From the NCBI GenBank assembly GCA_026770705.1, contig JANJGN010000052.1, positions 1-64,000 on the forward strand: a stretch of 64,000 nucleotides of DNA, read 5' to 3'. The translations under genes were made by a program, and so were the position numbers. Numbering within the stretch: position 1 is the stretch's first letter; every line of letters starts with the position of its first letter. The notes under the pieces were generated by a model. It was not told the origin of the DNA. It made no database searches and saw nothing but the letters and a program-made list of their open reading frames with translations. Shown in pieces: positions 1 through 17,797 of the stretch. This DNA comes from Isurus oxyrinchus. Its lineage: Eukaryota.

Positions 1-200
1 TGCACAGTCCTGTCACCGCCGGGCAGCTTTGAAAAGTTGATGTTGGCGTAGAAAAGCTCGTCTGGTTTGTCGGGGTTCCCATGTCCAACATCGCCTCCCA
101 CTGGACCTTCAGAGAGACCCCGGGGAGCTGGGGTCTCCCCCTCGCTAGTTGTGTCTCTGGTTGTGTTCCGGGCCTCAGTAATCAGCACGTTCTGTTTACC
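1..200 (-). CDS. Duplicated terminal cytoplasmic exon with canonical ITIM LFYANI (runs off the window edge)
   Basis: ctctgtag acceptor; GKQNVLITEARN...DKPDELFYANINFSKLPGGDRTV; open to position 1; ITIM at 39-56. Confidence 0.72.
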
Positions 201-627
201 CTACAGAGAAATAGAAACAGAAGACATCCTCACATCATTTACTGGTACTGATAGGGTTAAATTATTGTGCAGACTTGTTTAATTCTCTCTCTCCTATCGG
301 AAAAAAGACACCACCTATGGCAGTGCAGCACTCCCTCAGTACTGAGCTTCCAACAGTGCAGCACTCCCTCAGTGCTGACCCTCCGACAATACAGCGCTCC
401 CTCAGTACTGACCCTCTGTCAGTGCAGCACTCCCTCAGTACTGACCCTCCAACAGTGCAGCACTCCTTCAGTACTGACCCGCTGTCAGTCCCGCACTCCC
501 TCGGTAATGGCTCTGGTGAGTGACGGCTTGGATTCTGCGCTCAGGTGCCTGGTGTGAGGCTCAATAACATGAACCTTGTAATCAGAGAGAGGATGAGAGA
601 GAGGGATAGAGGAGGGATAGAGACAGA

Positions 628-1561
628 GTGTTATTAATCTATTAATGTTTGTATTGCAATTGCAAACTGTCTATTTAAACAGAGGTTTAGTCTGTGTGTG
701 TGTCTGTGTGTATTTTAATTGGATTAAAGCCAGCCAGTCTGTGTGCTTTGATGTATAGTAGTTTTGAGATGTAAACAAAGAGGTAAAGTGGTAATTTGCA
801 TTTTTAAATAAAACATTCAAAGTCTGAGAGTGAAATCTTAAACCAATCAACGTTTATATTACTAATAAAATTGATACGATGAAAGAGGATTTATTATTGG
901 AAGAGATGGAGTTCAAAGGTCCTGATGATACATTGCGAATTTACCTTCAAACAGAAGCCATAAGACCATAAGACATAGGAGGAGAAATTAGACCATTCGG
1001 TCCATCGAGTCTGCTCCACCATTCATACATGGCTGATATGTTTCACAAACCCCATTCTCCCACCTTCTCTCCTAACCATTGATCCCCTGACCAATCAAGA
1101 GCCCATCAATCTCCATCTTCTTCACACTCAAGAGCTGGGTATAACTTGAGCAGTTTTGTGTGTGCAGAGCAGAGGCTTGTAACATCAAAGCAGCTGTAAG
1201 CCTACACCTGTCTGCAAAGGAACCAAAGTGAAAGGAACCTCATTTGGAATTTGTGAGGTGAAAATGCTTTGCCTGGTGTCTGCTTAAAGTCTATGGGTTG
1301 TCTTGGAGGAGATTAGTTTGAGAATTTGTTATAAAGTTATGATAATACTAGTTTGTAGCCATGTGCATATGTTTAACTTGTGAAAATTAATAAATGTCTC
1401 ATTTAGATTGATATAAAATCATCTTGAGAACTGGTGGTCTTATTCCTGAATTTAGAGATGCATCTCAAACATTCCACTGCGAAATATAGGTTACGACAGC
1501 TGTTTAAAGTTTCCCTCTGGGATTTTAAGCAACAGCCTTTACCAGTTGCTGTGTCATAACA
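628..1561 (+). mobile_element. Solo LTR-like element with nested CR1 3' fragment
   Basis: TG...CA ends, internal AATAAA; resembles 32430-33357; partial copy at 3715-4027. Confidence 0.5.
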
Positions 1562-1696
1562 GAGAGACAGCATGATACTGAACCATTGCTGACTCCACAG
1601 GTACAAATCAGTGGGTAACTGGGCTGGGAATCTGGGACATATGTTGTCTACACACTGAGATTGAAGCTTTGGAGTGAGTGTAAACAGCTCCTGTAC

Positions 1697-1778
1697 CTGG
1701 TGCTTCACAGAGAGTGGACTGGGGGTCAATACAATGTCACTGGTCCCTGAAACTCTCTCCTCCATCGCTGTCTTTCTC
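1697..1778 (-). CDS. Duplicated cytoplasmic exon 1 (distal cassette of gene A)
   Basis: (K)RKTAMEERVSGTSDIVLTPSPLSVKHQ; intact splice sites; paralogous to 4163-4244. Confidence 0.7.
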
Positions 1779-1909
1779 CTGCAATAACAAAATATCACAC
1801 TGTGGTTATCATATAGCAGAGAGTCAGTGCAGCACAGACACAGAGCCCACTGTAACCTTACACCAATGACTGGACTCTCTCTTTAAATCACCTCTGCACA
1901 AAGCACAGA

Positions 1910-2375
1910 ATCAAGACGCTCGACACCATCCAGGACAAAGCAGCCCGATTGATCCATACCACATCCACCACATTAAACATTCACTCCCTCCACCATGAAC
2001 ACACAGTGGCAGCAGTGTGTGTACCATCTACAAGATGCACTGCAGCAACTCAGCAAGGCTCCTTCAACAGCACCTTCCAAATACGCGACCTCTACCATCC
2101 AGAAGGACAAGGACAGCAGACACATGGGAACACCACCACCTGGAAGTTCCCCTCCAAGTCACTCACCATCCTGACTTGGAAATATATCACCATTCCTTCA
2201 CTGTCGCTGGGTTAACATCCTGGAATTCCCTCTCTAACAGCACTGTGGGTGTACCTACACCACATGCACTGCAGCGGGTGAAGAAGGTAGCTCACCACCA
2301 CCTTCTCAAGGGCAGTTAGAGATTGGCATCAATGCGGACATCACCAGTGACAGCCACATTCGATGTAAGAATTAA
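1910..2375 (+). mobile_element. LINE 3' fragment (also at 4375-4845 and 57695-58745)
   Basis: Shared ctcgacaccatccagga...cagcagtgtgtaccatctacaagatg...ctcaccaccaccttctcaagggc. Confidence 0.7.
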
Positions 2376-2927
2376 AAATCTCACAGCTCAATGTATTTAT
2401 TGTGACCCTGCTGCACACACGCCCTGTCGAAGGAACCTCTGTGGTTCCATTGTTAATCGAAGCAGATCAGAGTTACTGCAACAACTTGCATTTATATAGC
2501 ACCTTCAATGTAGCAAAATGTCCCAAGGCTCATCCGGGGATTGTTAGTCACATTTCACCTGACTCTGAGGCACATGAGGAGATATTAGGGACAGGAGACC
2601 AACAGCTGAGTCAACAAAGTCAGTCATTAAGGGTCATCTTAAAGGAGGAGCAAGAGATAGAGAATGAGAGACTGACACAGAAAGAAAGAGAGAGACAGAG
2701 AGGAAGAGAGAGAGAGAGAGAGAGAGACAGTGAATCTCACTCCTCAATGGCTCAGCATCCAGTCCTCTCTGGAGAAGCATTTCATTCCAAACCACACCAA
2801 CCGCAGCCCAATTCCATCCCTTCCTCCCTCTCTCCCCCTCTCCCCCAGTGGGTTGTTTCCTGTTCCCAGGGATCTCAATCCCTACCCGCACACCCACATC
2901 TCCTCACTCCCACTCCCCATTTCTCAT

Positions 2928-3176
2928 TCAGTTATGCTCAAACCTGATCTGTGCGTATTCCATCTCCTCTTCCCTGTGGACAGACCCATCATCACTGGAC
3001 ACCCTCAAAACTTGGGGATTGGCGTAGAGAAACTCTTCAGGTTTGCCGGGGTTCCCAAGTCCAGCATCGCCTCCCACTGCATCTTCAGAGAGACCCCGGG
3101 GAGCTGGGGTCTCCCCCTCACTAGTTGTGTCTCTGGTTGTGTTCCGGGGCTCAGTAATCAGCACGTTCTGTTTACC
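2928..3176 (-). CDS. Gene A terminal cytoplasmic exon (proximal cassette; FLYANP, MEYAQI)
   Basis: ccgtag acceptor; GKQNVLITEP...EEFLYANPQV...EEMEYAQIRFEHN*; minus-strand AATAAA at 2396-2401. Confidence 0.8.
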   Translation of the reverse strand, partial: GKQNVLITEPRNTTRDTTSEGETPAPRGLSEDAVGGDAGLGNPGKPEEFLYANPQVLRVSSDDGSVHREEEMEYAQIRFEHN

Positions 3177-6100
3177 CTACGGAGAAATGGAAACAGAAGA
3201 CATCCTCACATTATTTACTGGCACTGATAGGGTTAAATTATTGTGCAGCTTCGTTAATGTCAGTCGTGTCTCAGTGAGTTTAACTCTCTCTCCCATGTCT
3301 TATGAAAGAAACCACCTATGGCAGTGCAGTGCTCCCTCAGGACTGACCCTCCAACAGTGCAGCACATCCTCAATAGTGACCCTCTGTCAGTCTCGCACTC
3401 CCTCAGTACTGACCCTCTATCAGTCTCGCACTCCCTCAGTACTGACCCTCCGACAGCGCAGCAAAAACCTCAGTACTGACCCTCTGACAGTGCAGCGCTC
3501 CCTCAGTACTGACCCTCCGATGGTGCAGCGCTCCCTCAGTACTGACCCTCTGTCAGTCTCGCACTCAATCGGTAATGGCTCTGGTGAGTGACGGCTTGGA
3601 TTCTGCACACAGGTGCCTGACGTGAGGCTCAATAACATGAACCTTGTAATCAGAGAGAGGATGAGAGAGAGAGAAAGAGAGAGAAAGAAAGGGAGGTTGA
3701 GATAGAGAGAGAAACTGGAATTTGTGAGGTGAAAATGCCTGGAATCTGCTTAAAGACTATGGGTTGTCTTAGAGGAGATTAGTTTGAGAATTTGTTAAAA
3801 AGTTATGATAATACTAGTTTGTAACCATGTGCATATGTTTAACTTGTGTAAATTAATATATGTCTCATTTAGTTTGATATAAACCCATCTCGAGAACTGG
3901 TGGTCTTATTCCTGAATTTAGAGATGCATCTCAAACATTCCACTGGGAAATATAGGTTATGACAGTTGTTTAAAGTTTCCCTCTGGGTTTTTAAACAACA
4001 GCCTTTACCAGTTGCTGTGTCATAACAGAGAGACAGCATGATACTGAACCATTGCTGACTCCACAGGTACAAATCAGTGGGTAACTGGGCAGGGAATCTG
4101 GGACATGTGTTGTCTACACACTGAGATTGAAGCTTTGGAGTGAGTGTAAACAGCTCCTGTACCTGGTGCTTCACAGAGAGTGGACTGGGGGTCAATGCAA
4201 TGTCACTGGTCCCTGAAACTCTCTCCTCCATCGCTGTCTTCCTCCTGCAATAACACAATATCACACTGTGGTTATCATATAGCAGAGAGTCAGTGCAGCT
4301 CAGACACAGAGCCCACTGAAACCTTACACCAACGACTGGACTGTCTCTTTAAATCACTTCTGCACAAAGCACAGAATTAAGAAGCTCGACACCATCCAGG
4401 ACAAAGCAGCCCGATTGATCTACACCCCATCCACCACATTAAACATTCACTCCCTCCACCATGAACACACAGTGGCAGCAGTGTGTGTAACATATACAAG
4501 ATGCACTGCAGCAACTCAGCAAGGCTCCTTCAACAGCACCTTCCAAACCCACGACCTCTACCATCTAGAAGGACAAGGGCAGCAGACACATGGGAACACC
4601 ACCACCTGGAAGTTCCCCTCTAAGTCACTCACCATCCTGACTTGGAAATATATCACCGTTCCTTCACTGTCGCTGGGTCAAAATCCTGGAGCTCCCTCTC
4701 TAACAGCACTGTGGGTGTACCTACACCACATGGACTGCAGTGGGTCAAGAAGGCAGCTCACCACCTCATTCTCAAGGGGCATTTAGGGAATGGGCAATTA
4801 GTATTGGCCACGCCAGTGACAGTCACATTCGATGAAAGAATTTAAAATCTCACAGCTCAGGAGGGAGCCACTCAGCCCATCGTGCCTGTGCTGGCCCTTT
4901 GTAAAAACTGTCCAATTAATCCTAAACAAATGTTTATATTAAAATCAAGTTAAATCTTCAGACTTACTTTCTCACACAGATGAAGATGAAGATTCCAGCC
5001 AGGAAAACACTCAACATGATCCCAGCCGTGAACAATCCTACTGTCCATTTACTGGAGTCTCTACCTGTAAAAACAGTCATTAATTACTGCACTACAGGTT
5101 TACAATGATGCTCCGATGTATCTCGAGAAGCGATACACTCACTCAGTGTTTAAATACTCATTCTCGGGCAATGCTGACATTTATTGTCCATCCCTAGTTT
5201 CCCCTTGAGAAGGTGGTGGGGGGTCTTCCTCCTGAACCACTGGTTTGTCCCAAACTGGGAGACCAGTTCAGAGGGCAGGTAAGAGTTAACCATGTTGGTG
5301 TTTGAGACTGGAGTCACATACACACCCAGACCTGTTAAAATGGACAGGTTTCCCTCACTAAATGTGTAATTATATCTTTAATTTCTATATATATGTATCA
5401 ACTAACATCACTAAAATAATCATTTATCACCTCATCTTCACACTGTTGTTTGTGGGATCTTGCTCTGCACAAATCAGCTGTTGCGTTTCTCAACGTAATC
5501 TATGTAACATTTATATATAATATTTATCAATGTAATCTATGTAACATTTATATATAATATTTATCAATGTAATCTATGTAACATTTATATATAATATTTA
5601 TCAATGTAATCTATGAAATGTTTATATATAATATTTTATCGTTTGGGAGGAGAACCTGAGTATTGCTGAGAAAGGACATTTTGTCAAAGCTTTCTGTCTT
5701 GCACCCAATGAAGCAGCTTATCTGGGGGAGAGGGTTCCAGATTTCCACTCCCCTTTGTGTGAAGAAGTGCTTCCTGACATCACCCCCTGAACGGCCTGGC
5801 TCCAATTTGACCAAGTGTTGCCATTGTCACATGAGGTCAGACGATTCAAAGCTTGGTCAAAGGGGTCAGTTGTAAAGAGCATCTTAGAGGAGGTAGAGAG
5901 AGAGTTGGAGAGGTTGAGGGAGCGAATTCTCGAGTTTAGGGATCAATCCAGCTGAGTGGAGATCGATCCTGAGCGAGTCTTTCACCTTTGACCCACAGAT
6001 ACATCTTGAACATGGCTTCCCCGTGTGGGTTTTGAACCGAGCAGGATGCAATCACTCCCCCCTCATCCTGGGGTCTCATCAGGGTGAGGGAACCAGTCAC

Positions 6101-9100
6101 CAGATGCCCATCTCTGACCTGCCACGACACAAAACCTCCGTGTGTTTGGTTACCACTGATGTTGGCACTGGGCAGGTGCCAGGTGAGGTCTCCGGGTGGG
6201 TTGGAGTTGGCCACACAGATGCAGGTGACCCCCTCTGACCTCCGAGTGCACTCTGACTGCTGGGAAATCTCCGGCTTATCTGAGGAGGGAAGGACAACAA
6301 TGAGACAACTTCATAGCAAAGTTAGAGCGTAAGATAGAATCTTCACACTGAAACACTCATTCCTGCCTTTGTTACCTCCGTACTCGACTATCGCAACACT
6401 CTCCTGCCCGACCTCTCATCTTCCACTCTCCGGAAACATCAGCTCATCCCAAACTCTGCTGTCCCCATGTCCTAACTCACACCGAGTCCCGTTCAGACAT
6501 CACTCCCTGTTGGTCACTGAGCTACACTGGCTCCCGGTCCGACAATGCCACAATTTTAAAATTATCATCGTTTCAAATCCCTCCTTACTCCCTCCCTATC
6601 TCTGTAACCTCCTCAAGCCCCTACAACCCTCCCTATCTCTGTAACCTCCTCCAGACCCTACAACCCTCCCTATCTCTGTAACCTCCTCCAGACCCCACAA
6701 CCCTCCCTATCTCTGTTACCTCCTCCAGCATCTACAACCCTCCCTATCTCTGTTACCTCCTCCAGCCCCTATAACCCTCCCTATCTCTGTTACCTCCTCC
6801 AGCCATCACAACCCTCCCTATCTCTGTAACCTCCTCCAGACCCCACAACCCTCCCTATCTCTGTAACCTCCTCCAGCATCTACATCCCTCCGAGGTCTCT
6901 GCGTTCCTCCAATTCCGGCCTCTTGACCATCCCCCGATTCCTACCGCTCCACCATTGGCGGCCGTGCCTTCAGCTGCCTGGGCCCCGAGCTCTGGAATTA
7001 CCTCCGTAAACCTCTCCATTTCTATCTCTCTCCTCATTTCAGACACTCCTTAAAATCCGGCCTCTTTCTCTGAGCTTTCAGTCCCTGTTCTAATATCTCC
7101 TTATGTATCTCGGAGAGGCGCAGGGTGAAAAAAGCAGGGAGGTGATGCTAGTTATGCTAAACCACAGCAAGGAAGCTGCCCTCAGACAGAAAGTGTTTGA
7201 GTTTTAAGCAGAGACAGGGGGAGTAAAATGCTTACATTGTACGTTCAGGTGGGTGATGTTGGAGGTGCTGTTACCCACTGGGTTCCTCGCTGTGCAGTAG
7301 AAACCTGCATCATTCTCCCGTGTTACAGGAGTGAAGGAGAGAGTGCGGCTACTTGTGTTTAACTGGGTGCTGGTGTTCCCCTCGATCCTGAACCAGGTGT
7401 AATGAGATATCGGTGGGACACTTTCACTGGAGCAGGTTAATGTGATATTGCTTCCCTCTCTTATCCCACCTGAGGATCTGCTGATGGACACCATCGTCTC
7501 CTGTGGGGAATCTGGAACAAAGACAGAGAACAATCAGCAGGTAATCCCCACACCCCACAGCTCTCCGAAATCTCTGCGCTCCTCCAATTCCGACCCCTTG
7601 CACATTCTCCCATTCCCATCTCTCCACCATTGGCGGCCGTGCCTTCAGCTGCCTGGACCCTAACCTCTGGAATTCCCTCCATCATTTCTCACCTCCTTCG
7701 GACAAAATCTGACCCCGAGTCACATTAGGAGATATTAGGAGAGGTGAGCAAAAGCTCGCTGAAAGCAGGAGGTTTTAATGGTGTGTCTTAATGGTTTTAA
7801 GGAGCATCTTAATGGTTGAGAAAGAGTTGGAGATTGTGTATCTCCCGCGCATCCCCCCTTGCAAATTCCTCTCCCTCCCAGAGCAATGTAAGGGTCCCTC
7901 CTGTCTTCACTTTTCACCCCACCAGCCTCCTCATTCAAAGGATCATTCTCCGCCATTTCCGCCAACTTCAGCATGATGCCACCACCAAACACATCTTCCC
8001 TTCACCACATCCGCCCCCCCCCCCACCCCCCCCCACGTTGGCATTCCATAGGGATCATTCCCTCCAGGACACCCTGGTCCACTCCTCCATCACCCCTAGC
8101 ATCTCAACCCTCTCCGATGACATCTTCCCATGCATTTGCAGAAGGTGCAACACCTGCCACTTTACTTCCTCTCCCCTCACTGTCCAATGACCCAAACACT
8201 CCTTCCAGGTGAAGCAGCGCTTCATGCAGACTTCCTTCAATATAATCTACTGCATTCACTGCTCCCAATGTGGTCTCCTCTACATTGGAGACACCAAACA
8301 CAGACTGGGTGATCGCTCTGATGAACACCTTCGGTCTGTCCACAAGCATGACCCAGACCTCCCTGTCGCTTGCCATTTTAACACCCCACCCTGCTCTCAT
8401 GCCCACATGTCCGTCCTTGGCCTGCTGCATTGTTCCAGTGAAGCCCAACACAAACTGGAGGAACAGCACCTCATCTTCCGACCTGGCACTTTACAGCCTT
8501 CCCGACTGAATATTGAGTTCAACACTTTCAGATCATGAACTCTCTCCTCGATCTTCACTGCTTTTTGAACCCTTTTTTTATGTATTCATTTTAATTGTTT
8601 TATTTGTTGACTGTTTTCCACTTATTTTTATTATTATTATTTGAAATTCATTTCCATTTTTATTGATTGTTTTATCCACAGATTTTAGTCTATTTTCGAT
8701 CTTTATTCCCTCCACTGTCCCCTCCCCCTGCCACACCCCCACAAGGGCCATCTGTCTCTTTCCAGAGTGCTTACCCTGGTCCGCCCATTATCACACTCTG
8801 CTTAATGTCACCATTAGCACCTCCTTTAACCAATACCACCACTGTTAACAACCCTTTGACCTTTTGTTTATGACATCTTCCACAATCTCTCCATTGCCTC
8901 CACCTATCGCTGGTTTTCTATCCAGCTCCACCTGTCCCATCGCCCCCCCTTAGACAGGATATATTTCACCACATGTCTACTTCCCTTTAGCTCTGAAGAG
9001 GAGTCTTACGGACTCCAAACGCTAACCCTGTCTTTCTCTCCACAGATGCTGCCAGATGCTCAGAATCAGCTGGATGGACAGAAAGACCAATGAGTGACTT

Positions 9101-10491
9101 AGATCAAGAGGAGATGTTCAGCAATTAAAAGGGTTGTTCAGGGCAGTTAGAGAGAGAAAGTTCATCAAGTACGGAGATTGGAAACGAAGACCTGACAGCC
9201 TTGTCCTCACAACCATTGAAGGAGAAACTGAGAGCAAAAACAGAAAGGGAGAGGAAAAATTGGGTGTGTGGATAACGTGGACTGAGCGAGGATTGAAGAA
9301 AACTGGATTAAAAACAACACGATCCCAATGGCTCCACGGAGACCACGGAGACAACAAACAAACAAATGTATCTCCACACTCACATTCCACAGTGATGGTT
9401 ATGAACCCCTCCACTGCTCCATGTTCATTCTCTGCCACACACTGATAGTCTCCAGTGTCCCTGGATGTAACGTGAGGAATCACCAACCACAGCTCATTGT
9501 TGGAACTTGTTCTGTTCATTGGGACATTAAGATGTCGCCACGTCAGGTTAGAAGCTGGGAAGCTCTCGACAGAGCAGATTATCACTGCAGAATTCCCCTC
9601 AATTATATTGATCGATGAAGCGTTAATCATATCAAGAGAAGTAATTGATGGGTTCCGTGGTGCATCTAAATACAAATAAAGGTTTCATTGTGAGCAAACA
9701 CAGTGCACAGCAAGACTCCAGGTATCATCTCTCTCCATCTGGTGTCTATGTGCATGTCAAGGCTTCTTTCTCCATTATAAGTTTCTATGTCACCATTTGT
9801 AACAGACACTGCCAGTGTGTTCCTTTTTGCATATTCATGGGAAGTGGATGTATCTATCTAGACCAGCATTTATTACCCATCCCTAATTGCCCTTGAGGAG
9901 GTGGTGGTGAGTTATTCACCCCCACAGAATTCCCAGCCTCTGACCGGCTCCTGTAGCCACAGTATTTATGGCCGGTCCAGTTAGTTGTTTGGTTAACATC
10001 CCCCAGGATGTGGATCGTGGGGGATTCAGCGATGGGAAAGTGATTGAATATCAAGGTGAGATGGTTAGATTCTCTCTTGTTGGAGATGATCACTGCCTGG
10101 TACTTGTGTGGTGTGAACATTACTTGTCATTTCTCAGCCCAAGCTGAGTGTTGTTCAGCTCTTGCTGCGTGTGGATATGTAAACTGTCACGCTGTAATTA
10201 CAGCCTTCCACCAGAGGAGACACTGTCAGGCTAGAAGAAAAGAAAGTGTCTTTCACATGATCAGGATGTTCACGGAGATTTCACCATGGAGGAATTGCTT
10301 TGGAATAATGGGGTATTGGGTGATAAACCTACAATTCACTGTTCAGGAGGTTGCTCCATCCAATTCAGTGTCTTGATGATCTGGAGTTTACCTTCCTTCA
10401 ACACAGAATCAGAGCTGCTACCGAGACTCGAGTGCAGCACTGAGACAGGAGAGGGAGCTGACACGTGTGTGTGTATGTGTGTTTGTGTGTG

Positions 10492-10549
<58 letters not shown>

Positions 10550-13500
10550 GTTGAAGTTTGCAGTAACTCACGTTCCACAGTGATGGTTATGAACCCCTCC
10601 ACTGCTCCATGTTCATTCTCTGCCACACACAGATAGTCTCCAGTGTCCCTGGATGTAACGTGAGGAATCACCAACCACAGCTCATTGTTGGAACTTGTTC
10701 TGTTCATTGGGACATTAAGATGTCGCCACGTCAGGTTAGAAGCTGGGAAGCTCTCGACAGAGCAGATTATCACTGCAGAATTCCCCTCAATTATATTGAC
10801 CGATGAAGCGTTAATCATATCAAGAGAAGTAAATGAGAGATTCTGTGGAGCATCTAAGAACAAATCAAGTATTTAATGTGAGCAAGCACTGTGCACAGCA
10901 AGACTCCATGCATCATGTCTCTGTATCTGATGCCTGTGTGCATTTCTAGGCACCTTCCCTCAAGATAAGTTCCTATGTCACATTTACAATGGGCACTGCC
11001 TATGTAAACTGTCACACTGCAGGAGCATTCTCCCACCAGAGACCCTGCCCATCCGGATTTAAAGAAACTCCCTTTCACATCCTCAGGATGTCCCCAAGGG
11101 CTTGACAGGCAATGAATTATATTTAATCGATGGAGCACTGAGGGGTAAATCTACAATTCTCTGTTAAGGATTTTGCTCATCCAATTCAGGGTCTTGTTGA
11201 TCTGGAGTTTACCTTCCTTCAGCACAGAATCGGAGCTGACACCGAGACTCCAGTGCAGCACTGAGAGAGGAGAGGGACCTCACATGAGTGTATGTGTGTG
11301 TGTGTGTTTGTGTTTCTGCACAAGTNNNNNNNNNNNNNNNNNNNNNNNNNNNNNNNNNNNNNNNNNNNNNNNNNNNNNNNNNNNNNNNNNNNNNNNNNNN
11401 NNNNNNNNNNNNNNNNNNNNNNNNNNNNNNNNNNNNNNNNNNNNNNNNNNNNNNNNNNNNNNNNNNNNNNNNNNNNNNNNNNNNNNNNNNNNNNNNNNNN
11501 NNNNNNNNNNNNNNNNNNNNNNNNNNNNNNNNNNNNTGTGTGTTGTCTGTGTGCGCGTGTGCATGTGNNNNNNNNNNNNNNNNNNNNNNNNNNNNNNNNN
11601 NNNNNNNNNNNNNNNNNNNNNNNNNNNNNNNNNNNNNNNNNNNNNNNNNNNNNNNNNNNNNNNNNNNNNNNNNNNNNNNNNNNNNNNNNNNNNNNNNNNN
11701 NNNNNNNNNNNNNNNNNNNNNNNNNNNNNNNNNNNNNNNNNNNNNNNNGTGTGTGTCTGTTGGTGCGTGTGTGGTCTGTGTAACCTGTAAACCTAACCCT
11801 TCCACACTGATGGTCACGAACACCCCCCACTGCCAACAAATTTATCTCAGTAAGGAACATGGCACTGCCAACCCCGTCAATACCATCTTCTAAACGGGGG
11901 ATTGGGTAGGAATCTGGTTTTATTGCTGCATTAACCTTTCTGTAATGTATGCAGAATCTGGTTGGAAATGAAATACCTGCTCCTTTTTACCTCCCTCCCT
12001 ACGATGGTATCGTTTTAACATATTGATGTGTCACAGCCGATTCTTTATTCTACAATCTGGGGTGTGTATCAAATAATTTACTTGACCAACCCTCCTAATT
12101 ACCTTGTGGGGACCACTGAACCGCGCTTTCAGAGGCTCCCCCTGCCAAGGCAATGATACTAACACGTCATCCCCCTGGTTGAGATGTTCGGGTCACAGCT
12201 TGCCTGTCTACCCCATTCCTTCATCTCTGTTTGAGAAACTATAAGATGTTCTTGTGCCACTTTGGAGGCTCCCATGAGCCGTTCCTGAAACATGGACACA
12301 TCATCTGAAATAGAGGATTCATCCCTCTGTCCGGAATATCTTTCTTTGATGAATTTCAGACAGCCTCTTATCTCGTGTCCATAAGTTATTCCAAAAAGAC
12401 TAAAACCTGCCGATTCAGTTGGTGAATCTCGTGTGGGAAATGCAAGAAAATCCAGTCCTTTGTCCCAGTCATGGGGAGTTCATGACAATAGCTTCAATCA
12501 TTGTTTTGAGGGTTTGTTGGTCCCTCTCTAAAGATCCCCGTGTCTATGGATGATATGCTGTGGACTTTAACTGTTTTATACCCAAATTACTCATTATGTT
12601 CGGAAAATTTTAAGACATAGAGATGGAACCTTGATCTGACTGGATCTCCAGCGGTAATCCATAATGGGTAAAAAATTGGGTTAACTTCCCTATTACTACT
12701 TTAGCTGTAATTGTTCCTAAAGGGATGGTCTCTGGAAATCGAGTTGTCATATCCATCATAGTGAGGCCATACTGGAGTCCGGCTTTCATTTTCGATAATG
12801 GTCTAACACAGTCCACTAATGCTCGTATCCAATGGTAACGGACAATTAACTCACTGGAGGAGGGGAATCCACAAATATCCCCATCCTCAATGAACGGGGA
12901 GCCCAGCACATCAGGGCAAAAGATAAGGCTGAAGCATTTGCTACAACAATTATCCATTTCTGTCTGGCGTAAAAATAAGTCAGGAAATGGTGCTCAACCA
13001 GGGCTTACAAAAGAAATTAGGGATAGTATTAGATCCAGAGAGGAGACATAAAATTGCCAGGGGAAGCAGCAATGCTGAGGATTGGGAGCAGTTTAGAATT
13101 CAGCAAAAGTGGACAAAAAGATTGATCAAGAAGGGGAAAATGGAACATGGGAGTAAACTTGCAGGGAACGTAAAAACCGACTGTAAAAGCTTCTATAAAT
13201 ATGTGAAGAGAGAAAGATTAGCAGTGACCGATGTAGGTTCCTTGCAGTCAGAAATGGGGGAAATTCTAATGAGAAACAAAGAAATGGCAGAAGAACTGAA
13301 CATATATTTTGGTTCTGTCTTCACAAAAGAGGACACAAATAATTTCCCAGGAATGTTAGGGAACCAAGTGTCTAGTGAGAGGGAGGAATTGAAGATAATC
13401 AGGATTAGTTTTAAAAAATGGAGCTGGAGAAATTAATGGGTTAAAGGTTGAACAGTCCCCAGGGCCTGAAAATCTACATCCCAGAGACTAACGGAAGTGA

Positions 13501-16500
13501 CCCTGGAAATATTGGAAGCACTGGTGGTCATCCTCCAAAATTCTATAGGCTCTGGAGCAGTTCCTATAGATTGGAGGGTGGCAATTGTAACCCCACTATT
13601 TAAAATAGAAGGGAGAGAAAAAAACTGGGAATTACAGATCAGTTAGTCTAACATGGGGAAAACGCTAGAGCCTATTATATAAGGTGTGCTAACGGAACGC
13701 TTGGAAAGCATTAATGGGATTAGACAAAGTCAGCATGGGTTAATGAAAGGAAAATCATGCTTAACTAATCTACTGGAGATTTTGAGGATGTAACTTGTGG
13801 AATAGATAAGGGATAACCAGTGGATGTGGTGTTTTTAGATTTCAAGAAGGCTTTTGATAAGGTCCCACATAAGAGGCTAGTGGGCAACATTAAAGCTCAT
13901 GGGATTGGGGGTAATTTACTGACATGGATTGAGAATTGGTCGACAGACAGGAAACAGAGGGTCAGAATAAATTAGTCTTTATCTGAGTGGCAGGCGGTGA
14001 CTAGTGGTGTACCACAGGGATCCGTGCTTGGGACCTAACGATTCACGATATATTTAAATGACTTGGGTGAGGGAGCCAAGTGCAATATTTCCAGGTTTTC
14101 TGATGACACAACGCTGGGTAAGGGTGTGAGCTGTGAGGAGGATGCAAAGAGGCTTCAAGGCGATTTAGACAAGTTGTGTGTGTGGGCAAACATATGGCAG
14201 ATGATGTGGATGAATGTGACATTGTAGGCTTTGGTGTGAAAAACAGAAAGGCAGAGTATTATTTAAATGGTGATATAATGGGAAATGTGGATGTACAAAG
14301 GGATCTGGGTGTCCTTGTGCACTAGCCAATGAAAGTAAACAGGCAGGTGCAGCAAGTAATTCGGAAGGCAAATGGTATGTTGGCCTTCATTGCAAGAGGA
14401 TTTGTGTTCAGGAGTAGGGATGTCTCACTGCAGTTATACAAGGTCTTGGTGAGACTGCACATGGGGTACTACGTGCCGTTTTGGTCTCCCTCCCTAAAAA
14501 AGGATAGACTTGCCATCGAGAGAGTGCAGAGAAGGTTCTCTAGGCTGATACCAGGGGCGGCAGGACTGTCGTATGAGGAGAATTGGTACGACTGGGTCTG
14601 TATTCACTAGAGTTTAGAAGAATGAGAGGAGACCTGAATAAACGTAAGAAATTCTAACAGAGATAGACAGACTGGATGGAGGGAGGATGCATCCCTTGGT
14701 TGGGGAGTCTAAAACCAAGGGCGACAATCTCAGGATACAGGGCAGGCCATTTTGGACTGAGATAGGGAAACATTTCTTCACTGAGAGGGTGGTCAATCTG
14801 TGGAATTCTCCATCACAGAGGCTGTGGAGGCCGGGTCACTGAGTGTATTCAAGAAAGAAACTGATAAATATTTTGATATTAGGGGCATCAAAGGGTACGG
14901 AGAGAAAGCGGGAATAAGGCTTTGAGATAGAGGGTCAGCCTTGATCATATTGAATGGCGGAGAAGGCTTGAAGGGCTGAATGTCCTAATCCTGCTCCTAG
15001 TTTCTATGTACCTAGGTATCTATAGAACTATCTCTCTCCGTGTTCTATTCTCATGTGACCTTGAGTAACTGATGATAAATACTATCTATTTACATTGTTA
15101 ATATTAAACTTTTATACTACATCTCCCCCAAAATCTTTGACATCAATGAAGACAATATTTATATTATCCTATATTGTCTTTTAAGTTCAACCTTGGCCCC
15201 CTCTGCCTTATCAGGTAGGCATAAACAATCCCAAGGCTCAATACAGGAAGAGCTCTCCCTGGTCAATATCACTAATAAAAAAGGACCTGTTTTGTCTTCA
15301 ACCCAGTGATGTTTGTGGGATCTTGCTCTGCACATTGTATCCTATTACAGCTAATATAGAATCAAGGGTGTCAGTACTTACCTTGTACAGTTAGTACAAG
15401 GGTCCGCTCCGATGAAACAGATGGATATCTCACTCTGCAGCAGAGTGTGTGTCCGTGGTGTTTGAGTGATGGGATCAGGGTCAGAACAGAAGTATAGGTC
15501 AGAGTGACACCATGCTGAGTTACAGTGTTTGAGACTGATCCACGTACGTCAGTGGGAGTGTCCCAGGTTAAGACAGGTGCTGCTGTTCCATTGCACGTTG
15601 TGTTGAAGGTGCAGCTTACATCCACACGCTTTCCTGCAATAATTTCAGCAGGGAATATCATGGGTTTATCTGTGAAATCTAACAGACAGAGAATGGATCC
15701 TTTTAGAGAAATATAATGTGAAGCATCAGTTCAAATAGAAATCACAGTCCCACAAGAGAAAGCACTTTTACAAGGATGATATCAGAACTGAGAGGTTACA
15801 ATGATCAGGAAAGATTTTCTTGCTCTTTGGCAGTAGTGTTTCTGTCTCTCAGCTTAATACATGTTCACTCCGAGACATGTGAATTGAGAACACTGGATGA
15901 GAGAAGAGGCTCAGACCAGAGATTGGAGTTAAAAGCAGAATACTGCGGATGCTGGAAATCTGAAACAAAAACAAAAATTGCTGGAAAGACTCAGCAGGTC
16001 TGACAGTATCAGTGGAGAGGAAGACAGGGTTAACGTTTCGAGTCCGTATGACTCTTCATCAGACCAGAGGTTTGAGTTCACTGGCTTCTCATTTCCTCAG
16101 TGATCTGGGTGATTTATTACATTGTGGTTTGTTGGATCTTGCTGTGCACAAACTGCCTGCTGTGTTTAACATCTGTGACTACAATTCAGGAATAATTTCA
16201 TTGGCTGTGAAGGGATTTGGATCCTCCTGAGGTGGTAAATTGCGCTGCAGAAATGTACATCTTTCTTTTATCGATACGTCAGACTTTTAAACAGGACAGG
16301 AGAGATTGATGGGAGTGGATAACCTGATAATACAGTTAATGCTTTTCATCATTGATATTAAAGTGAGTATTAGACGTTGCTTTAGGACTGAACTGGAAGC
16401 TATTGAGAATCAGACAGTGTGTTATAATAAGCTGTGTTTTGTGTTAATATGTAAACGTCACAGTTTGTGTTATTTCCCATTGAGTGTTGAATGTGAATTG

Positions 16501-17797
16501 TTGAGTAATTATAACACAGCACTTACCAGAAACATGAAGCTGGGTTACAGGGTAATAGTTATAGCGCGGACCATTGTCAAATTCTATTCTGAAAAAATAA
16601 GGTCCTGCATCTTCCCGTCTGATGTTGTTTATAATCAGGGAACAGTCGCCATCTTTCAGGTCTCCAGACAGCCGGGTCCGATTGTGGAACCGTGGTAACT
16701 CGTGACTGTGATCTTTGGAGTGAAAGGCAATGGGAGCCCAGGGAATCTGTTTCTCATTATTAAACCAGACTCCACCTCGCGGTTGGTTTTCCAAATGTGC
16801 TGGATAACTGTAATGACATGGAATCTGTACACACGAACCTTCCTGCGCTGTCACCTCTCGTGGAGTGTCACCTTTCCACTCTTGTGACAGTCCAACTGAG
16901 GAGAGAAATATCAAATATTTAATTCTGGATGGTTTGTAGATCCACTAGACTCGATATCCACCCCCTCCATCTCTGGAGCACAGTGGCTGCAGTGTGGACC
17001 ATCTACAGGACACACAAGGAACTCCCCAAGGTTTCACAATGGAGGGAAGAGAATCCTGGACACAGGAGTGGACAACTTCATTCTACATTGGCTCATGGTC
17101 CTCAGGACCCTGTTTAGTGAAGCCAGTCTTCCACCCAACACAGTGTCTACAAGATACACAGGGAAACTGTGTAAATATCTCATCTCTTTAAACTGACTGC
17201 TTTGGCTTCGGTTTAACTTTCAGTTATTTTACTTCCTTATTGTGGTTGCTATGGTGAAACTGTGCAGGAAGTGCGAGGGCTGGACTCTCTGTCTATTCTC
17301 ACTGCAGCTGTGATGTGGCCGTGGTGATTCTCAGTAAAATGAAACCCTCTGAGCTCCTCCATCCCCGAGGTTTAGGGAGTGAATTCCAGAGCTCAGGCCC
17401 CAGGCAGCTGAAGGCCCGGCCGCCAGTATTGGAGTGATGGGAATCGAGGGATGGTCAAGAGGCCGGAATTGGAGTAACACAGAGATCTGGGACGTTGGTT
17501 GGGAGAGTTGCAGGAGGTTACAGAGATAAGGACGCAGTGTGAGGCAATGGATGCATTTGAACAAAGAGATGTGTATTTTAAGTTTGAGATGTTGTAGGAC
17601 CAGGAGTCAGATAGTTTAGGGATGATGGGTGAATGGGACTTGGTGTGAGTTTGTACACTGGCTCACTGCTGAATCAGTTCCCAATCACAGCTCAATAAGA
17701 ATGTTCTTTTACAAAGACTATTCACCATAAATCTGTCCGAGCTGACAATGGTATTACCTTGGAGAAGTGACAGGAGGAAGTAAGATTTCCCGATCAT
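2928..17797 (-). CDS. Gene A: Siglec-like type I membrane receptor, inhibitory-type (leader, V-set, 5 C2-set, TM, Tyr-motif tail), about 755 aa, 10 coding exons
   Basis: Exons 17797-17758, 16895-16527, 15678-15382, 10853-10572, 9665-9384, 7511-7236, 6279-5986, 5064-4968, 4244-4163 and 3176-2928 are joined by GT-AG introns with compatible phases and sum to 2268 nt (756 codons) with no internal stop. Confidence 0.85.
4163..4244 (-). CDS. Gene A cytoplasmic exon 1 (proximal cassette)
   Basis: (K)RKTAMEERVSGTSDIALTPSPLSVKHQ; 82 nt, phase 2 to 0; ttgcag acceptor, CAG|gtacag donor. Confidence 0.8.
4968..5064 (-). CDS. Gene A transmembrane exon (uncharged)
   Basis: GRDSSKWTVGLFTAGIMLSVFLAGIFIFICVRK; ttttacag acceptor, AA|gtaagt donor; not in the ORF track. 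Confidence 0.88.
5495..5640. repeat. 37-bp AT-rich tandem repeat, about 4 copies
   Basis: gtaatctatgtaacatttatatataatatttatcaat. Confidence 0.85.
5986..6279 (-). CDS. Gene A membrane-proximal Ig exon (MAG domain-5-like)
   Basis: YKPEISQQSECTRRSEGVTCICVANSNPPGDLTW...SCSVQNPHG; the SxC-x8-CxC-xxxSNP pattern is typical of the last Ig domain of MAG and many Siglecs; 294 nt. Confidence 0.85.
6591..6885. repeat. 37-bp tandem repeat inside an L2-like fragment (6355-7110)
   Basis: ctccctatctctgtaacctcctccagaccctacaacc, about 8 copies. Confidence 0.9.
7236..7511 (-). CDS. Gene A C2-set exon (CD22/sialoadhesin-type YSP...EGSNITLTCSSESVPP)
   Basis: Ig C-W-C pattern (LTC, YTW, DAGFYC); 276 nt; ttccag acceptor, gtaag donor. 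Confidence 0.9.
7835..9058 (+). mobile_element. Penelope-like retroelement 3' fragment (GIY-YIG endonuclease)
   Basis: NIIYCIHCSQCGLLYIGDTKHRLGDR...HFN...EEQHLIFR..TLQP..LN; ends in a ctgaaga-gagtc/gactc terminal motif. Confidence 0.85.
9384..9665 (-). CDS. Gene A C2/I-set stalk exon (copy 2)
   Basis: Near-identical to 10572-10853; 282 nt, AG/GT flanks. Confidence 0.9.
10465..10546. repeat. (TG)n microsatellite next to a stalk-exon donor
   Basis: Direct inspection; the N runs at 11326-11748 and 59477-59661 also lie in TG-rich tracts. Confidence 0.9.
10572..10853 (-). CDS. Gene A C2/I-set stalk exon (copy 1)
   Basis: DAPQNLS...IICSVESFPASNLTW...DTGDYLCVAENEHG; 282 nt, AG/GT flanks. Confidence 0.9.
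11830..12830 (-). mobile_element. Gypsy/Ty3 LTR retrotransposon integrase fragment (decayed)
   Basis: VDCVRPL...DMTTRFPETIPL...FTHYGLPLEIQSDQGS integrase core. Confidence 0.8.
12975..15025 (+). mobile_element. CR1-type LINE, 5'-truncated and decayed
   Basis: KSFYKYVK, AEELNIYFGSVFTKED, RT motifs, LYKVLVRLH...ERVQRRF, and a CR1 3' end with a short-repeat tail. Confidence 0.88.
15382..15678 (-). CDS. Gene A C2-set domain 2 exon
   Basis: DFTDKP...VSCTFNTTCNG...LTW...CRVRYP; the extra Cys fits the Siglec V-C2 interdomain disulfide; 297 nt, phase 1-1. Confidence 0.9.
16527..16895 (-). CDS. Gene A V-set sialic-acid-binding-type Ig exon
   Basis: Siglec hallmarks: N-terminal Trp, GSCVQIPC, GDCSL (B-E disulfide), F strand YFFR with the essential Arg instead of YYC. 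ctcag acceptor, G|gtaagt donor, 369 nt. Confidence 0.93.
17758..17797 (-). CDS. Gene A leader exon (MIGKSYFLLSLLQ)
   Basis: ggacaATG with A at -3; 40 nt; CAAG|gtaat phase-1 donor; joins VGLSQ-EW of the V exon to complete a signal peptide. Confidence 0.85.

What the first reader, a model, noticed from the sequence alone, without database searches (positions are those of the whole stretch)
1..4860. Two tandem cytoplasmic-tail cassettes behind one TM exon: ITIM-dead versus ITIM-intact
Seen: a block of about 2.5-3 kb starting about 110 bp past the gene A TM donor is duplicated (junction near 2390/4858), copying both tail exons but not the TM. The copies are near-identical until the Tyr motif, where they diverge sharply: proximal EEFLYANPQVLRVS (no hydrophobic +3 residue) versus distal DELFYANINFSKLP (canonical L-x-Y-x-x-I). 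The proximal copy also has MEYAQI and its own AATAAA (2396-2401) right at the junction. All splice sites are intact. Inference: alternative last-exon or poly(A) choice could switch the same receptor between strongly inhibitory and attenuated forms.
Basis: partly seen in the sequence, partly recalled or inferred. Interest (0 to 1): 0.78.

Follow-up and report, generated by a model that had tools for sequence, protein, structure and literature searches.

The report
Shark Siglec gene with doubled tail
A shark immune-receptor gene of the sialic-acid-sensing (Siglec) type carries its two signalling-tail exons twice in a row, and the two copies are mainly spliced one after the other into a single long tail rather than used as an either/or switch.

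Summary
Behind the TM exon (5064-4968, minus strand) a two-exon tail cassette is tandemly duplicated, with its junction at 2390/2391 and its other boundary at 4859/4860. The copies diverge exactly at the first tyrosine motif: 132/140 then 39/60 identical bases.

The gene is an intact multi-Ig Siglec.

The proximal "last" exon has an internal GT donor at 2943-2942, five codons before its stop. Contigs from two runs join 2944 in frame to the distal cyt1 acceptor at 1778, and the DNA run lacks that joint.

Twelve RefSeq models from great white and basking shark show the same in-series doubled tail. The first cassette lacks an ITIM in 12/12. One great white gene has six predicted isoforms: three in series, two distal-only, one proximal-only. 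A switch may therefore exist as a minor mode.

Each cassette copies the CD33-related Siglec design of two tyrosine motifs 23 residues apart. The distal exon runs off the window.

The scan found the same layout elsewhere in this genome (s1-865407, s1-865411). I found no paper on it. Interest is moderate.

The parts
2391..4859 (-). Proximal copy of the duplicated unit (2469 bp): part of the TM-cyt1 intron, cyt1, intron, cyt2, 3' UTR and poly(A) signal
   Evidence: blastn of the two halves; the repeat finder families D4, D5, D6, D9
1..2390 (-). Distal copy of the duplicated unit, cut off by the window start
   Evidence: a 156-letter X1 contig bridges 2390/2391
4968..5064 (-). Transmembrane exon (97 nt). 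It enters in phase 1 and leaves in phase 2, with donor AAA|GTAAGT. It is not duplicated.
   Evidence: tblastn with shark Siglec models gives 88-97% identity
4163..4244 (-). Proximal cytoplasmic exon 1 (82 nt, 27 codons plus 1 base)
   Evidence: X1 contigs join its end to a cyt2 start (joint 3175->4163 and three loose ends at 4162)
2944..3176 (-). Proximal cytoplasmic exon 2 up to its internal donor (233 nt, ends in phase 2). It carries FLYANP (no ITIM +3 residue; YxN kept) and MEYAQI, with the two Tyr 23 residues apart.
   Evidence: joint 1777->2943 (cut +1) in X1 and X7
2942..2943 (-). Internal GT donor of proximal cyt2 (context CAG|GTTTGAG; weak by comparison with the consensus, which I recall rather than scored)
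   Evidence: sequence; skipped-segment ends CT..AC on the + strand = GT..AG on the minus strand
2928..2943 (-). Read-through end of the proximal ORF if the donor is not used: the last base of an Arg codon, then FEHN and the stop (2930-2928)
2391..2927 (-). Proximal 3' UTR if unspliced, or part of the 1165-nt intron 2943-1779 if spliced
   Evidence: X1 contigs here have depths of 82-160, against thousands on exon bins. The tool warns that depth cannot rank parts of a gene.
2396..2401 (-). AATAAA, the only poly(A) signal hexamer on the minus strand in 2300-2930, 5 bases from the duplication junction
1697..1778 (-). Distal cytoplasmic exon 1 (80/82 identical to the proximal one). Its acceptor at 1778 receives the proximal cyt2 donor.
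1..200 (-). Distal cytoplasmic exon 2, first 66 codons. It carries LFYANI (canonical ITIM, also YxN). The open frame continues beyond the window.
   Evidence: Closest models continue for about 18-19 more codons with a TEYAQI/TEYTQI motif.
622..1244 (.). 623-bp segment present only in the distal copy (repeat-like insertion in the cyt1-cyt2 intron)
   Evidence: high depth in DNA run X18 for bin 851-1020
5984..17797 (-). Upstream exons of gene A, all open. Boundaries are approximate, taken from tblastn: leader at 17797, V-set 16917-16528, C2-set 15691-15377, Ig exons 10857-10573, 9669-9385, 7533-7231, 6298-5984.
   Evidence: Assembly gaps at 11326-11536 and 11568-11748 lie inside this span.

Best explanation
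Gene A is an intact multi-Ig Siglec of a shark close to the great white and basking sharks. Its two-exon cytoplasmic module (cyt1 + cyt2) was tandemly duplicated, together with the old 3' UTR and poly(A) signal.

The old terminal exon holds a GT five codons before its stop, in phase 2, the same phase as the TM-exon donor. The copied cyt1 acceptor downstream can therefore be used in frame. The last two bases AG of the proximal exon plus the first G of distal cyt1 make an Arg codon.

The main product is thus one receptor with a doubled tail carrying four tyrosine motifs:
- a proximal pair without a valid ITIM (FLYANP, MEYAQI);
- a distal pair of the ancestral inhibitory type (LFYANI, plus an expected TEYAQI-type motif just beyond the window).

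Each pair has the 23-residue Tyr-Tyr spacing of mammalian CD33-related Siglec tails.

Shown: the duplication, the open frames, the in-series RNA joint, and the same design in annotated relatives.

Inferred: that the distal pair recruits SHP-1/SHP-2; that the proximal pair signals weakly or differently; and that the weak donor competes with the proximal poly(A) site, and with cassette skipping, to give minor short forms.
For: 1.

2. In one search, joint 1777->2943 (cut +1, ends GT..AG on the minus strand) appears in X1 (1 contig, depth 5054, side 25) and in X7 (1 contig, depth 29, side 29). These are two studies and two organism codes. The joint is absent (0 contigs) in the large run X18, taken to be DNA. 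In X1 the exon bins reach 7,500-42,000 while unique intron bins stay at 86-122.

3. phmmer of the proximal cyt2 exon against 1.84 billion representatives gave 11 hits. The best, P0001, has two matched stretches joined as '...TEYAQIR|RKTA...'.

4. Doubled tails cover at least 98% of the query in 4 of 18 proteins and 3 of 37. With cluster members, 12 of 65 stored proteins have two cassettes, and none has more than two. All 12 are from Carcharodon carcharias (10) or Cetorhinus maximus (2).

5. Residues 32-66 of the window's proximal cyt2 match cassette 1 of P0015/26/27 best (29/35), and those of distal cyt2 match cassette 2 best (32/35). The two window copies match each other in only 16/35. The P-then-I order is therefore older than this gene.

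6. The V-set exon matches Siglec-5, -7, -8, CD33 and MAG structures (E 2e-16 to 1e-14), with YFFRIE aligned to Siglec-5 YFFRVE. Pfam finds V-set and Ig_CD22.

7. The Tyr-Tyr spacing is 23. Human Siglec-9 has its ITIM at 431-436 and its ITIM-like motif at 454-459 (passages of PMC7165337).
Against: - The joints rest on one short Logan contig per run, with sides of 25 and 29 letters. The tool itself warns about sides under 30.
- The runs are only guessed to be RNA.
- Many paralogues share this tail at 95% identity or more, so the contigs cannot be assigned to gene A itself or even to the window's species.
- The XP_ models are automatic predictions; that they are computational is my own knowledge.
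- The end of the distal exon is outside the window.
- The donor CAG|GTTTGAG looks weak.
- Exon identity between the cassettes (94-98%) is about the same as intron identity (93.7%), so the sequence shows no sign of selection on the proximal copy.
- The proximal second motif has M instead of T at -2.
Confidence: 0.7

Rival explanations
1. The two cassettes are mutually exclusive alternative ends. Each transcript carries either the ITIM-less proximal tail (ending at the proximal stop and the poly(A) signal at 2401-2396) or the ITIM-bearing distal tail (TM->1778 or 4163->200). This would toggle the receptor between attenuated and inhibitory forms.
For: - One Carcharodon gene has predicted isoforms of just these kinds: X4 (TM->distal cyt1), X5 (proximal cyt1->distal cyt2) and X3 (proximal cassette only, ending ...YAQISVNRTC).
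- X1 has loose ends at 1778 (letters equal to 4968-4982) and at 4967 (two contigs carrying the distal-type cyt1 start).
- The donor looks weak, and a poly(A) signal is retained about 540 nt downstream.
Against: - The only listed joints with both sides laid on this stretch are the in-series one and cyt1->cyt2.
- Three of the six isoforms of that gene, and every other doubled model, are in series.
- The loose ends are only 13-15 letters long, and the cyt1 copies differ at 2 of 82 bases, so paralogues or allelic variants can mimic them.
- X1 contigs over 2344-2642 run across the expected cleavage site at low depth, as an intron would.
Confidence: 0.17
2. Passenger relic. Only the distal, ancestral-type cassette matters. 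The proximal cassette is a neutral, slowly decaying insert that is tolerated because it stays in frame, or is skipped.
For: - The ITIM +3 residue is lost, and T->M at -2 of the second motif.
- Exons are no more conserved between the copies than introns.
- An earlier scan note (s1-865411) reports a fresh stop codon in the first copy of another gene of this genome. I did not check it.
Against: - The YxNP-type cassette is open and well conserved in many genes of two species. It is the first cassette in 12 of 12 doubled tails and the only cassette in 11 single tails among the lamniform-type tails picked by regex.
- It keeps TEYAQI in nearly all of these. That is not the pattern of free decay.
- The sample is biased, because it was gathered with tail queries.
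Confidence: 0.1
3. Assembly artefact. The tandem copy is a mis-assembled allele or paralogue.
For: The region is rich in high-copy repeats, and the window has assembly gaps elsewhere.
Against: - An independent run bridges 2390/2391.
- The copies differ by 6-16% and by a 623-bp insertion.
- The in-series splice needs the tandem order.
- Two other species have the same order in their models.
Confidence: 0.02

Closest known systems
Carcharodon carcharias 'myelin-associated glycoprotein-like' isoforms X1-X6 (XP_041037215-221; P0064, P0038, P0059, P0065, P0060, P0062), and 'sialic acid-binding Ig-like lectin 10' XP_041037239 (P0026)
   Same: They share the exon kit of V, C2, repeated Ig, TM and a doubled tail. 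They share the order of a YxNP-type cassette followed by a YANI-type cassette, and the same '...YAQIR|RKTA...' join. Identity to gene A is 88-98% in Ig exons, 77-84% for cassette 1 and 78-89% for cassette 2.
   Different: They are automatic predictions from another assembly or species, not identical to gene A. The window's proximal cassette has MEYAQI where they have TEYAQI, and SSDDG where they have SSGDG. The first 31 residues of the window's two cyt2 copies are 30/31 identical to each other, closer than either is to the models.
Mammalian CD33-related Siglecs (e.g. human Siglec-7/-9)
   Same: Both have an N-terminal V-set domain with the conserved Arg in a YFFR-x-E context. Both have a tail with a membrane-proximal ITIM and a membrane-distal ITIM-like xEYxxI motif 23 residues later (PMC7165337 passages).
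   Different: Mammalian tails carry one such pair. Here the pair is doubled in series, and the first pair has lost the ITIM. The ectodomain has more Ig exons. Orthology to any mammalian Siglec was not tested.
CD22 (Siglec-2)
   Same: Both are multi-Ig Siglecs with a long tail carrying several tyrosine motifs, including a YxN type. There is a Pfam Ig_CD22 hit on the V exon. The CD22 motif list is recalled, not tested.
   Different: CD22 structures are only weak matches (E 1e-4) compared with Siglec-5/7/8/CD33/MAG (E about 1e-15). The tail here arose by a recent cassette duplication, not from the CD22 exon set.
Splice-versus-poly(A) competition at an internal donor of a terminal exon (immunoglobulin mu secreted/membrane choice; recalled)
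   Same: A weak donor inside an exon that can also end the mRNA at its own poly(A) signal.
   Different: No evidence here that the choice is regulated or even made. This is an analogy only.

Membership tests
Siglec family (sialic-acid-binding Ig-like lectins) | N-terminal V-set Ig domain similar to known Siglec V-sets | tested here: met
   phmmer against PDB: Siglec-5 2.2e-16, Siglec-7 3e-15, MAG 4e-15, Siglec-8, CD33, Siglec-10, sialoadhesin. Pfam V-set 5.8e-12 and Ig_CD22 1.9e-09.
Siglec family (sialic-acid-binding Ig-like lectins) | Conserved arginine of the sialic-acid site on strand F | tested here: met
   Window YFFRIE aligns column for column with Siglec-5 YFFRVE. That this Arg is the essential one is established knowledge, recalled.
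Siglec family (sialic-acid-binding Ig-like lectins) | Binds sialylated glycans | not testable with these tools
   Needs glycan-array or cell-binding assays.
CD33-related-type inhibitory Siglec tail | Membrane-proximal ITIM (I/V/L/S)-x-Y-x-x-(L/V/I) | tested here: met
   The distal cassette has L-F-Y-A-N-I. The proximal cassette has F-L-Y-A-N-P and does not meet it. The consensus is recalled; the Siglec-7/9 examples are in PMC7165337.
CD33-related-type inhibitory Siglec tail | Second, membrane-distal ITIM-like/ITSM-like motif (T/N)-E-Y-x-x-(I/V) about 20 residues later | tested here: inconclusive
   The proximal cassette has M-E-Y-A-Q-I at +23, with M rather than T at -2. The distal cassette's second motif lies beyond the window. 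Closest models have TEYAQI or TEYTQI there.
CD33-related-type inhibitory Siglec tail | Recruits SHP-1/SHP-2 after tyrosine phosphorylation | not testable with these tools
   Needs phosphopeptide pull-down or signalling assays.
   The in-series joint 2944->1778 is seen in X1 and X7. All 12 doubled-tail models are in series. Single-cassette isoforms are predicted as a minority in one related gene, 3 of 6.
CD22 (Siglec-2) orthologue | Best similarity to CD22 among Siglecs | tested here: not met
   CD22 chains score E 1.2e-4 to 4.3e-4, far behind Siglec-5/7/8/CD33/MAG.

The most novel reading that the evidence does not exclude
The doubled tail is a three-way signalling dial. A weak in-exon donor, a retained proximal poly(A) site and cassette skipping would let one Siglec gene make three tails: a short ITIM-less tail (YxNP + xEYAQI), a purely inhibitory tail (ITIM + TEYAQI), or a four-tyrosine tandem tail. 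The YxNP cassette was seen only in lamniform sharks and is always placed first. On this reading it would be a new docking module (for example Grb2-type, through the retained YxN) rather than a dead ITIM.
Probability: 0.22. Interest if true: 0.55.

Novelty: new variant of a known kind. Interest (0 to 1): 0.36.

Why it matters
Inhibitory Siglecs are studied almost only in mammals, where the tail holds one ITIM / ITIM-like pair. Here a shark lineage has kept that design, down to the 23-residue spacing. It has then doubled it in series through a simple accident: a GT near the old stop codon sits in the same phase as the TM donor.

This is a clear natural example of a tandem duplication that includes a terminal exon being turned into internal coding sequence. 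It also supplies a natural set of tail variants (ITIM lost, ITIM kept, both) for testing how the number and order of tyrosine motifs tune inhibitory signalling.

It is not a large surprise. Automatic annotation already predicts it in two sharks, and the scan has met it at other loci of this genome.

Tried and rejected
- **Assembly artefact.** Rejected, because an independent contig bridges 2390/2391 and the in-series splice needs the tandem order.

- **Fresh duplication private to gene A.** Rejected, because each cassette's 3' part matches the corresponding cassette of Carcharodon models better than its own sister.

- **Compensated +1/-1 frameshift as the cause of INFSKL versus PQVLRV.** A gapped alignment raises the score only from 9 to 12 on 45 bases. 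Although 0 of 2000 shuffles reach 12, the ungapped alignment already scores 9. This stays an idea, not a finding.

- **Duplication by recombination between two copies of the high-copy repeat at 4379-4798 / about 1910-2330.** The only other window copy (58291-58698) does not define the repeat's end well enough to say that the junction lies at a repeat edge. Left open.

- **Short transcript-derived fragments that bridge the join.** The search for homologous proteins with the 77-residue exon found no candidate. That tool only sees proteins of 43-135 residues for this query.

- **P0017 and P0018 (both 458 aa, different tail types).** They are 89% identical along their whole length, so they are separate genes and not tail isoforms.

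- **DNA of the relatives' loci.** I could therefore not test whether the donor is conserved, nor explain the X3 ending at the DNA level. I can only say that VNRTC-stop equals the +1-frame reading of the start of cyt2.

- **Literature.** Four searches found no paper on shark Siglec tails: Siglec+shark+ITIM (35 papers held the terms, 15 listed); Siglec+cartilaginous fish+CD33-related (2); Siglec+elephant shark+evolution (5 held, 4 listed); exon duplication+ITIM+cytoplasmic tail+Siglec (2). I saw listings and abstract starts only. Papers outside that library are not covered. A fifth search gave PMC7165337, of which I read three passages. No supplementary file was asked for, and none bears on a claim here.

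Full report
**1. What is in the sequence**

The feature lies on the minus strand. The TM exon runs 5064-4968, enters in phase 1 and ends in phase 2 at AAA|GTAAGT. Two cassettes of two exons follow it.

| Cassette | cyt1 | cyt2 |
|---|---|---|
| Proximal | 4244-4163, 82 nt | starts at 3176, stop at 2930-2928 |
| Distal | 1778-1697 | starts at 200, still open at base 1 |

All four acceptors are AG and both cyt1 donors are CAG|GTACAG.

blastn of the two halves gives these matches (repeat finder agrees):
- distal 1245-2390 = proximal 3716-4859, 93.7% over 1151 columns;
- distal 43-621 = proximal 3019-3688, 83-88%.

The proximal unit is therefore 2391-4859 (2469 bp). It starts 108 bp past the TM donor and leaves the TM exon out. 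The distal unit carries an extra 623 bp of repeat-like DNA at 622-1244.

The cyt1 copies share 80 of 82 bases. The cyt2 copies share 132 of 140 bases up to the first tyrosine motif, then only 39 of 60.
- EEFLYANPQVLRVS..MEYAQI in the proximal copy;
- DELFYANINFSKLP in the distal copy.

The only poly(A) hexamer on this strand between 2300 and 2930 is AATAAA at 2401-2396, next to the junction.

**2. What gene this is**

The exon at about 16917-16528 is a V-set domain. Its best solved relatives are:
- Siglec-5 (E 2e-16);
- Siglec-7, MAG, Siglec-8 and CD33 (E about 1e-15);
- CD22, only at 1e-4.

Its YFFRIE aligns with Siglec-5 YFFRVE, the position of the sialic-acid-binding arginine (recalled knowledge). 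Pfam gives V-set and Ig_CD22 for this exon, and C2-set_2 or Ig_3 for the exons at 15691-15377, 10857-10573, 9669-9385 and 7533-7231. A leader exon (MIGKSYFLLSLLQ) starts at 17797. Every exon I could see is open. Two assembly gaps (11326-11536, 11568-11748) lie inside the gene, and I left them alone. Gene A is an intact multi-Ig Siglec.

**3. How the two cassettes are used: reads**

I laid four public runs on 1-5100. All are stored as short Logan contigs.
- X1 (organism code A), X5 and X7 (code B) are only guessed to be RNA.
- X18 (code B) is large and I take it to be DNA.

In X1 the exon bins have summed depths of 7,500-42,000, while unique intron bins (2551-2720, 3571-3740, 4761-4930) have 86-122. 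That is the pattern of RNA, although the tool warns that depth cannot rank genes.

The key result is a joint from 1777 to 2943 (cut +1). The skipped segment reads CT..AC on the plus strand, which is GT..AG on the minus strand. Its support is:
- X1: one contig, depth 5054, side 25;
- X7: one contig, depth 29, side 29;
- X5 and X18: none.

Read on the minus strand, an exon ends at 2944 and the next begins at 1778. Position 1778 is exactly the distal cyt1 acceptor. Position 2944 lies inside the proximal 'last' exon at ...CAG ATC AG|GTTTGAG, five codons before its stop.

The proximal cyt2 exon up to that donor is 233 nt, so it ends in phase 2, the same phase as the TM exon. The final AG plus the first G of distal cyt1 make an Arg codon, and the frame continues through distal cyt1 and cyt2. 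The cassettes are therefore spliced in series.

Other junctions in X1:
- a cyt1->cyt2 junction (joint 3175->4163, with one variant letter);
- three loose ends at 4162 that read into the start of a cyt2 exon.

Caveats:
- There is one short contig per run, and both sides are under the 30 letters below which the tool urges caution.
- Many paralogues share this tail, so the contigs show what the family does, not strictly what gene A does.

**4. How the two cassettes are used: relatives**

I searched exon by exon and did not join exons.

*First search.* The proximal cyt2 exon (77 residues) was run by phmmer against 1.84 billion representatives and gave 11 proteins at E <= 0.001.
- I read nine of them, and all nine are shark Siglec-type models.
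- The other two (E 9e-5 and 5e-4) are weak. One of them, P0011, is unrelated by its motifs.
- The best hit, P0001 from basking shark, has two matched stretches, and its sequence reads ...TEYAQIR|RKTATEER.... This is the same join as in the reads.

*Searches with the tails of stored proteins.*
- P0001 gave 18 proteins, 4 with at least 98% coverage.
- P0026 gave 37 proteins, 3 with at least 98% coverage.
- The other 34 of the 37 cover 56% or less. They include every model from Mustelus, two Scyliorhinus species, Stegostoma, Pristiophorus, Hemiscyllium and Rhincodon.

*Count over all stored proteins.* After adding cluster members, a local phmmer count over all 65 stored proteins gave:

| Matched stretches | Proteins |
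|---|---|
| Two | 13, of which one (P0011) is the unrelated weak match, leaving 12 doubled tails |
| One | 46 |
| None | 6 |
| More than two | 0 |

The 12 doubled tails are 10 great white and 2 basking shark models. They are not independent. Three are isoforms of one gene, and the set was gathered with tail queries.
- The first cassette is of the Y-x-(N/S)-P type in 12 of 12.
- The second cassette is YANI (a valid ITIM) in 8 and Y-x-N-P in 4.
- Single tails of non-lamniform sharks all show the ITIM-type context (YANI, YASI, YANV, YDNI) where the residues are readable.

The ITIM type is therefore ancestral, and the YxNP type is a derived form seen here only in lamniform sharks.

**5. Is there a switch after all?**

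One great white gene ('myelin-associated glycoprotein-like', XP_041037215-221) has six predicted isoforms:

| Isoform(s) | Tail |
|---|---|
| X1, X2, X6 | both cassettes in series |
| X4 | TM exon joined directly to the second cyt1 |
| X5 | first cyt1 joined to the second cyt2 |
| X3 | ends six residues after the first cassette's YAQI, with SVNRTC |

The VNRTC-stop part of the X3 ending equals the +1-frame reading of the start of a cyt2 exon. It looks like a splice from the internal donor to a cyt2 acceptor that skips cyt1.

In the reads, X1 has one loose end at 1778 whose 15 letters equal 4968-4982. It also has two loose ends at 4967 whose 13 letters match the distal version of the cyt1 start. 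This fits a TM->distal cyt1 junction. The two cyt1 copies differ at only 2 of 82 bases, and the run may be another species or paralogue, so I count it as a hint only.

X1 contigs over 2344-2499 and 2501-2642 have low depth (82 and 160). The first runs straight across the expected cleavage site, as an intron would.

My reading: series is the main mode. Distal-only and proximal-only forms are plausible minor modes. A regulated switch is not shown.

**6. Age and origin**

For residues 32-66 of cyt2:
- the window's proximal copy is closest to cassette 1 of P0015/P0026/P0027 (29 of 35);
- the distal copy is closest to their cassette 2 (32 of 35);
- the two window copies share only 16 of 35.

For residues 1-31 the two window copies are each other's best match (30 of 31). 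So the order 'YxNP cassette first, ITIM cassette second' predates the split between gene A and these great white genes. The 5' part of the cassette has stayed, or been made, alike within the gene. Gene conversion is my inference.

The duplicated unit ends just past the old poly(A) signal. The simplest origin is therefore a tandem duplication of 'intron part + cyt1 + cyt2 + 3' UTR'. The GT near the old stop happened to be in the right phase to reach the new cyt1 acceptor.

**7. How it most likely works**

Each cassette has two tyrosines 23 residues apart. Human Siglec-9 has the same arrangement, with its ITIM at 431-436 and its ITIM-like TEYSEI at 454-459 (passages of PMC7165337).

- **Distal pair.** By analogy (inferred), the distal pair, LFYANI plus an expected TEYAQI-type motif just outside the window, is the SHP-1/SHP-2 docking unit.
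- **Proximal pair.** It has P at +3 of the first motif and M at -2 of the second, so it should bind those phosphatases poorly. It keeps Y-x-N, the Grb2-type core (recalled), and may recruit other partners.
- **In-series tail.** It carries four candidate phosphotyrosines on one receptor.

**8. Comparison and novelty**

The ectodomain and the single cassette are ordinary CD33-related-type Siglec parts. Three things differ:
- the in-series doubling;
- the way it arose, with a terminal exon turned into an internal one;
- the fixed position of an ITIM-less cassette in front.

Automatic annotation already contains this design for two sharks. Earlier notes of this scan report it at two other loci of this same genome: s1-865407, whose conclusion (series or skipping) my calls support, and s1-865411. 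I found no paper on it in four searches (listings only). I rate it a new variant of a known kind, of moderate interest.

**9. Limits**

- The end of the distal exon is outside the window.
- The species of the window is not known to me.

Noticed in passing
window 321-506 and 3322-3557 (also 18.5-20.2 kb, 38.8-40.1 kb, 60.2-61.8 kb, 63.3-63.9 kb): A 33-bp tandem unit (CAGTGCAGCACTCCCTCAGTACTGACCCTCCAA-like) sits in the cyt1-cyt2 intron of both cassettes, with 5.6 and 7.1 copies. It forms long arrays elsewhere that give false long ORFs on both strands. It is extremely abundant in the DNA run (bin depths above 10 million).
   Followed up: partly
window 10573-10857 and 9385-9669 (minus strand): Two almost identical Ig exons follow each other in gene A's ectodomain, so exon duplication also occurs in the stalk. 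Assembly gaps at 11326-11536 and 11568-11748 lie just upstream and could hide another copy.
   Followed up: no
window 17797, 38066, 49293, 51591 (minus strand): Four leader exons of the type MI(G/R)KSYFLLSLLQ. The window therefore holds at least four Siglec-type gene starts in the same orientation.
   Followed up: no
window 1-60 versus 2977-3036: The INFSKL versus PQVLRV difference can be partly aligned at the DNA level with a one-base shift over CAA-n-TTTT. This hints at a compensated frameshift as the origin of the ITIM-less type. The gain in score is small (12 versus 9).
   Followed up: partly
window 4379-4798 and about 1910-2330; also 58291-58698: A high-copy interspersed repeat lies inside the duplicated unit, close to its upstream boundary. 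Whether the duplication arose by recombination between repeat copies could not be decided.
   Followed up: partly
window 5936-6214 (minus strand): The last Ig exon before the TM gives no Pfam hit at E <= 0.01, although it aligns at 92-95% to the corresponding part of shark Siglec models. In one great white model (P0036) the ORF reads through its donor into ...GERLAQDRSPLSWID, as the window ORF does.
   Followed up: no
window 5486-5636 and 6590-6891: 37-bp tandem repeats (4 and 8 copies) lie in the introns flanking the last Ig exon.
   Followed up: no
stored proteins P0023 (Cetorhinus) and the window's proximal cassette: MEYAQI instead of TEYAQI occurs independently in a basking shark single-tail model, so the T->M change is not unique to this gene.
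   Followed up: no
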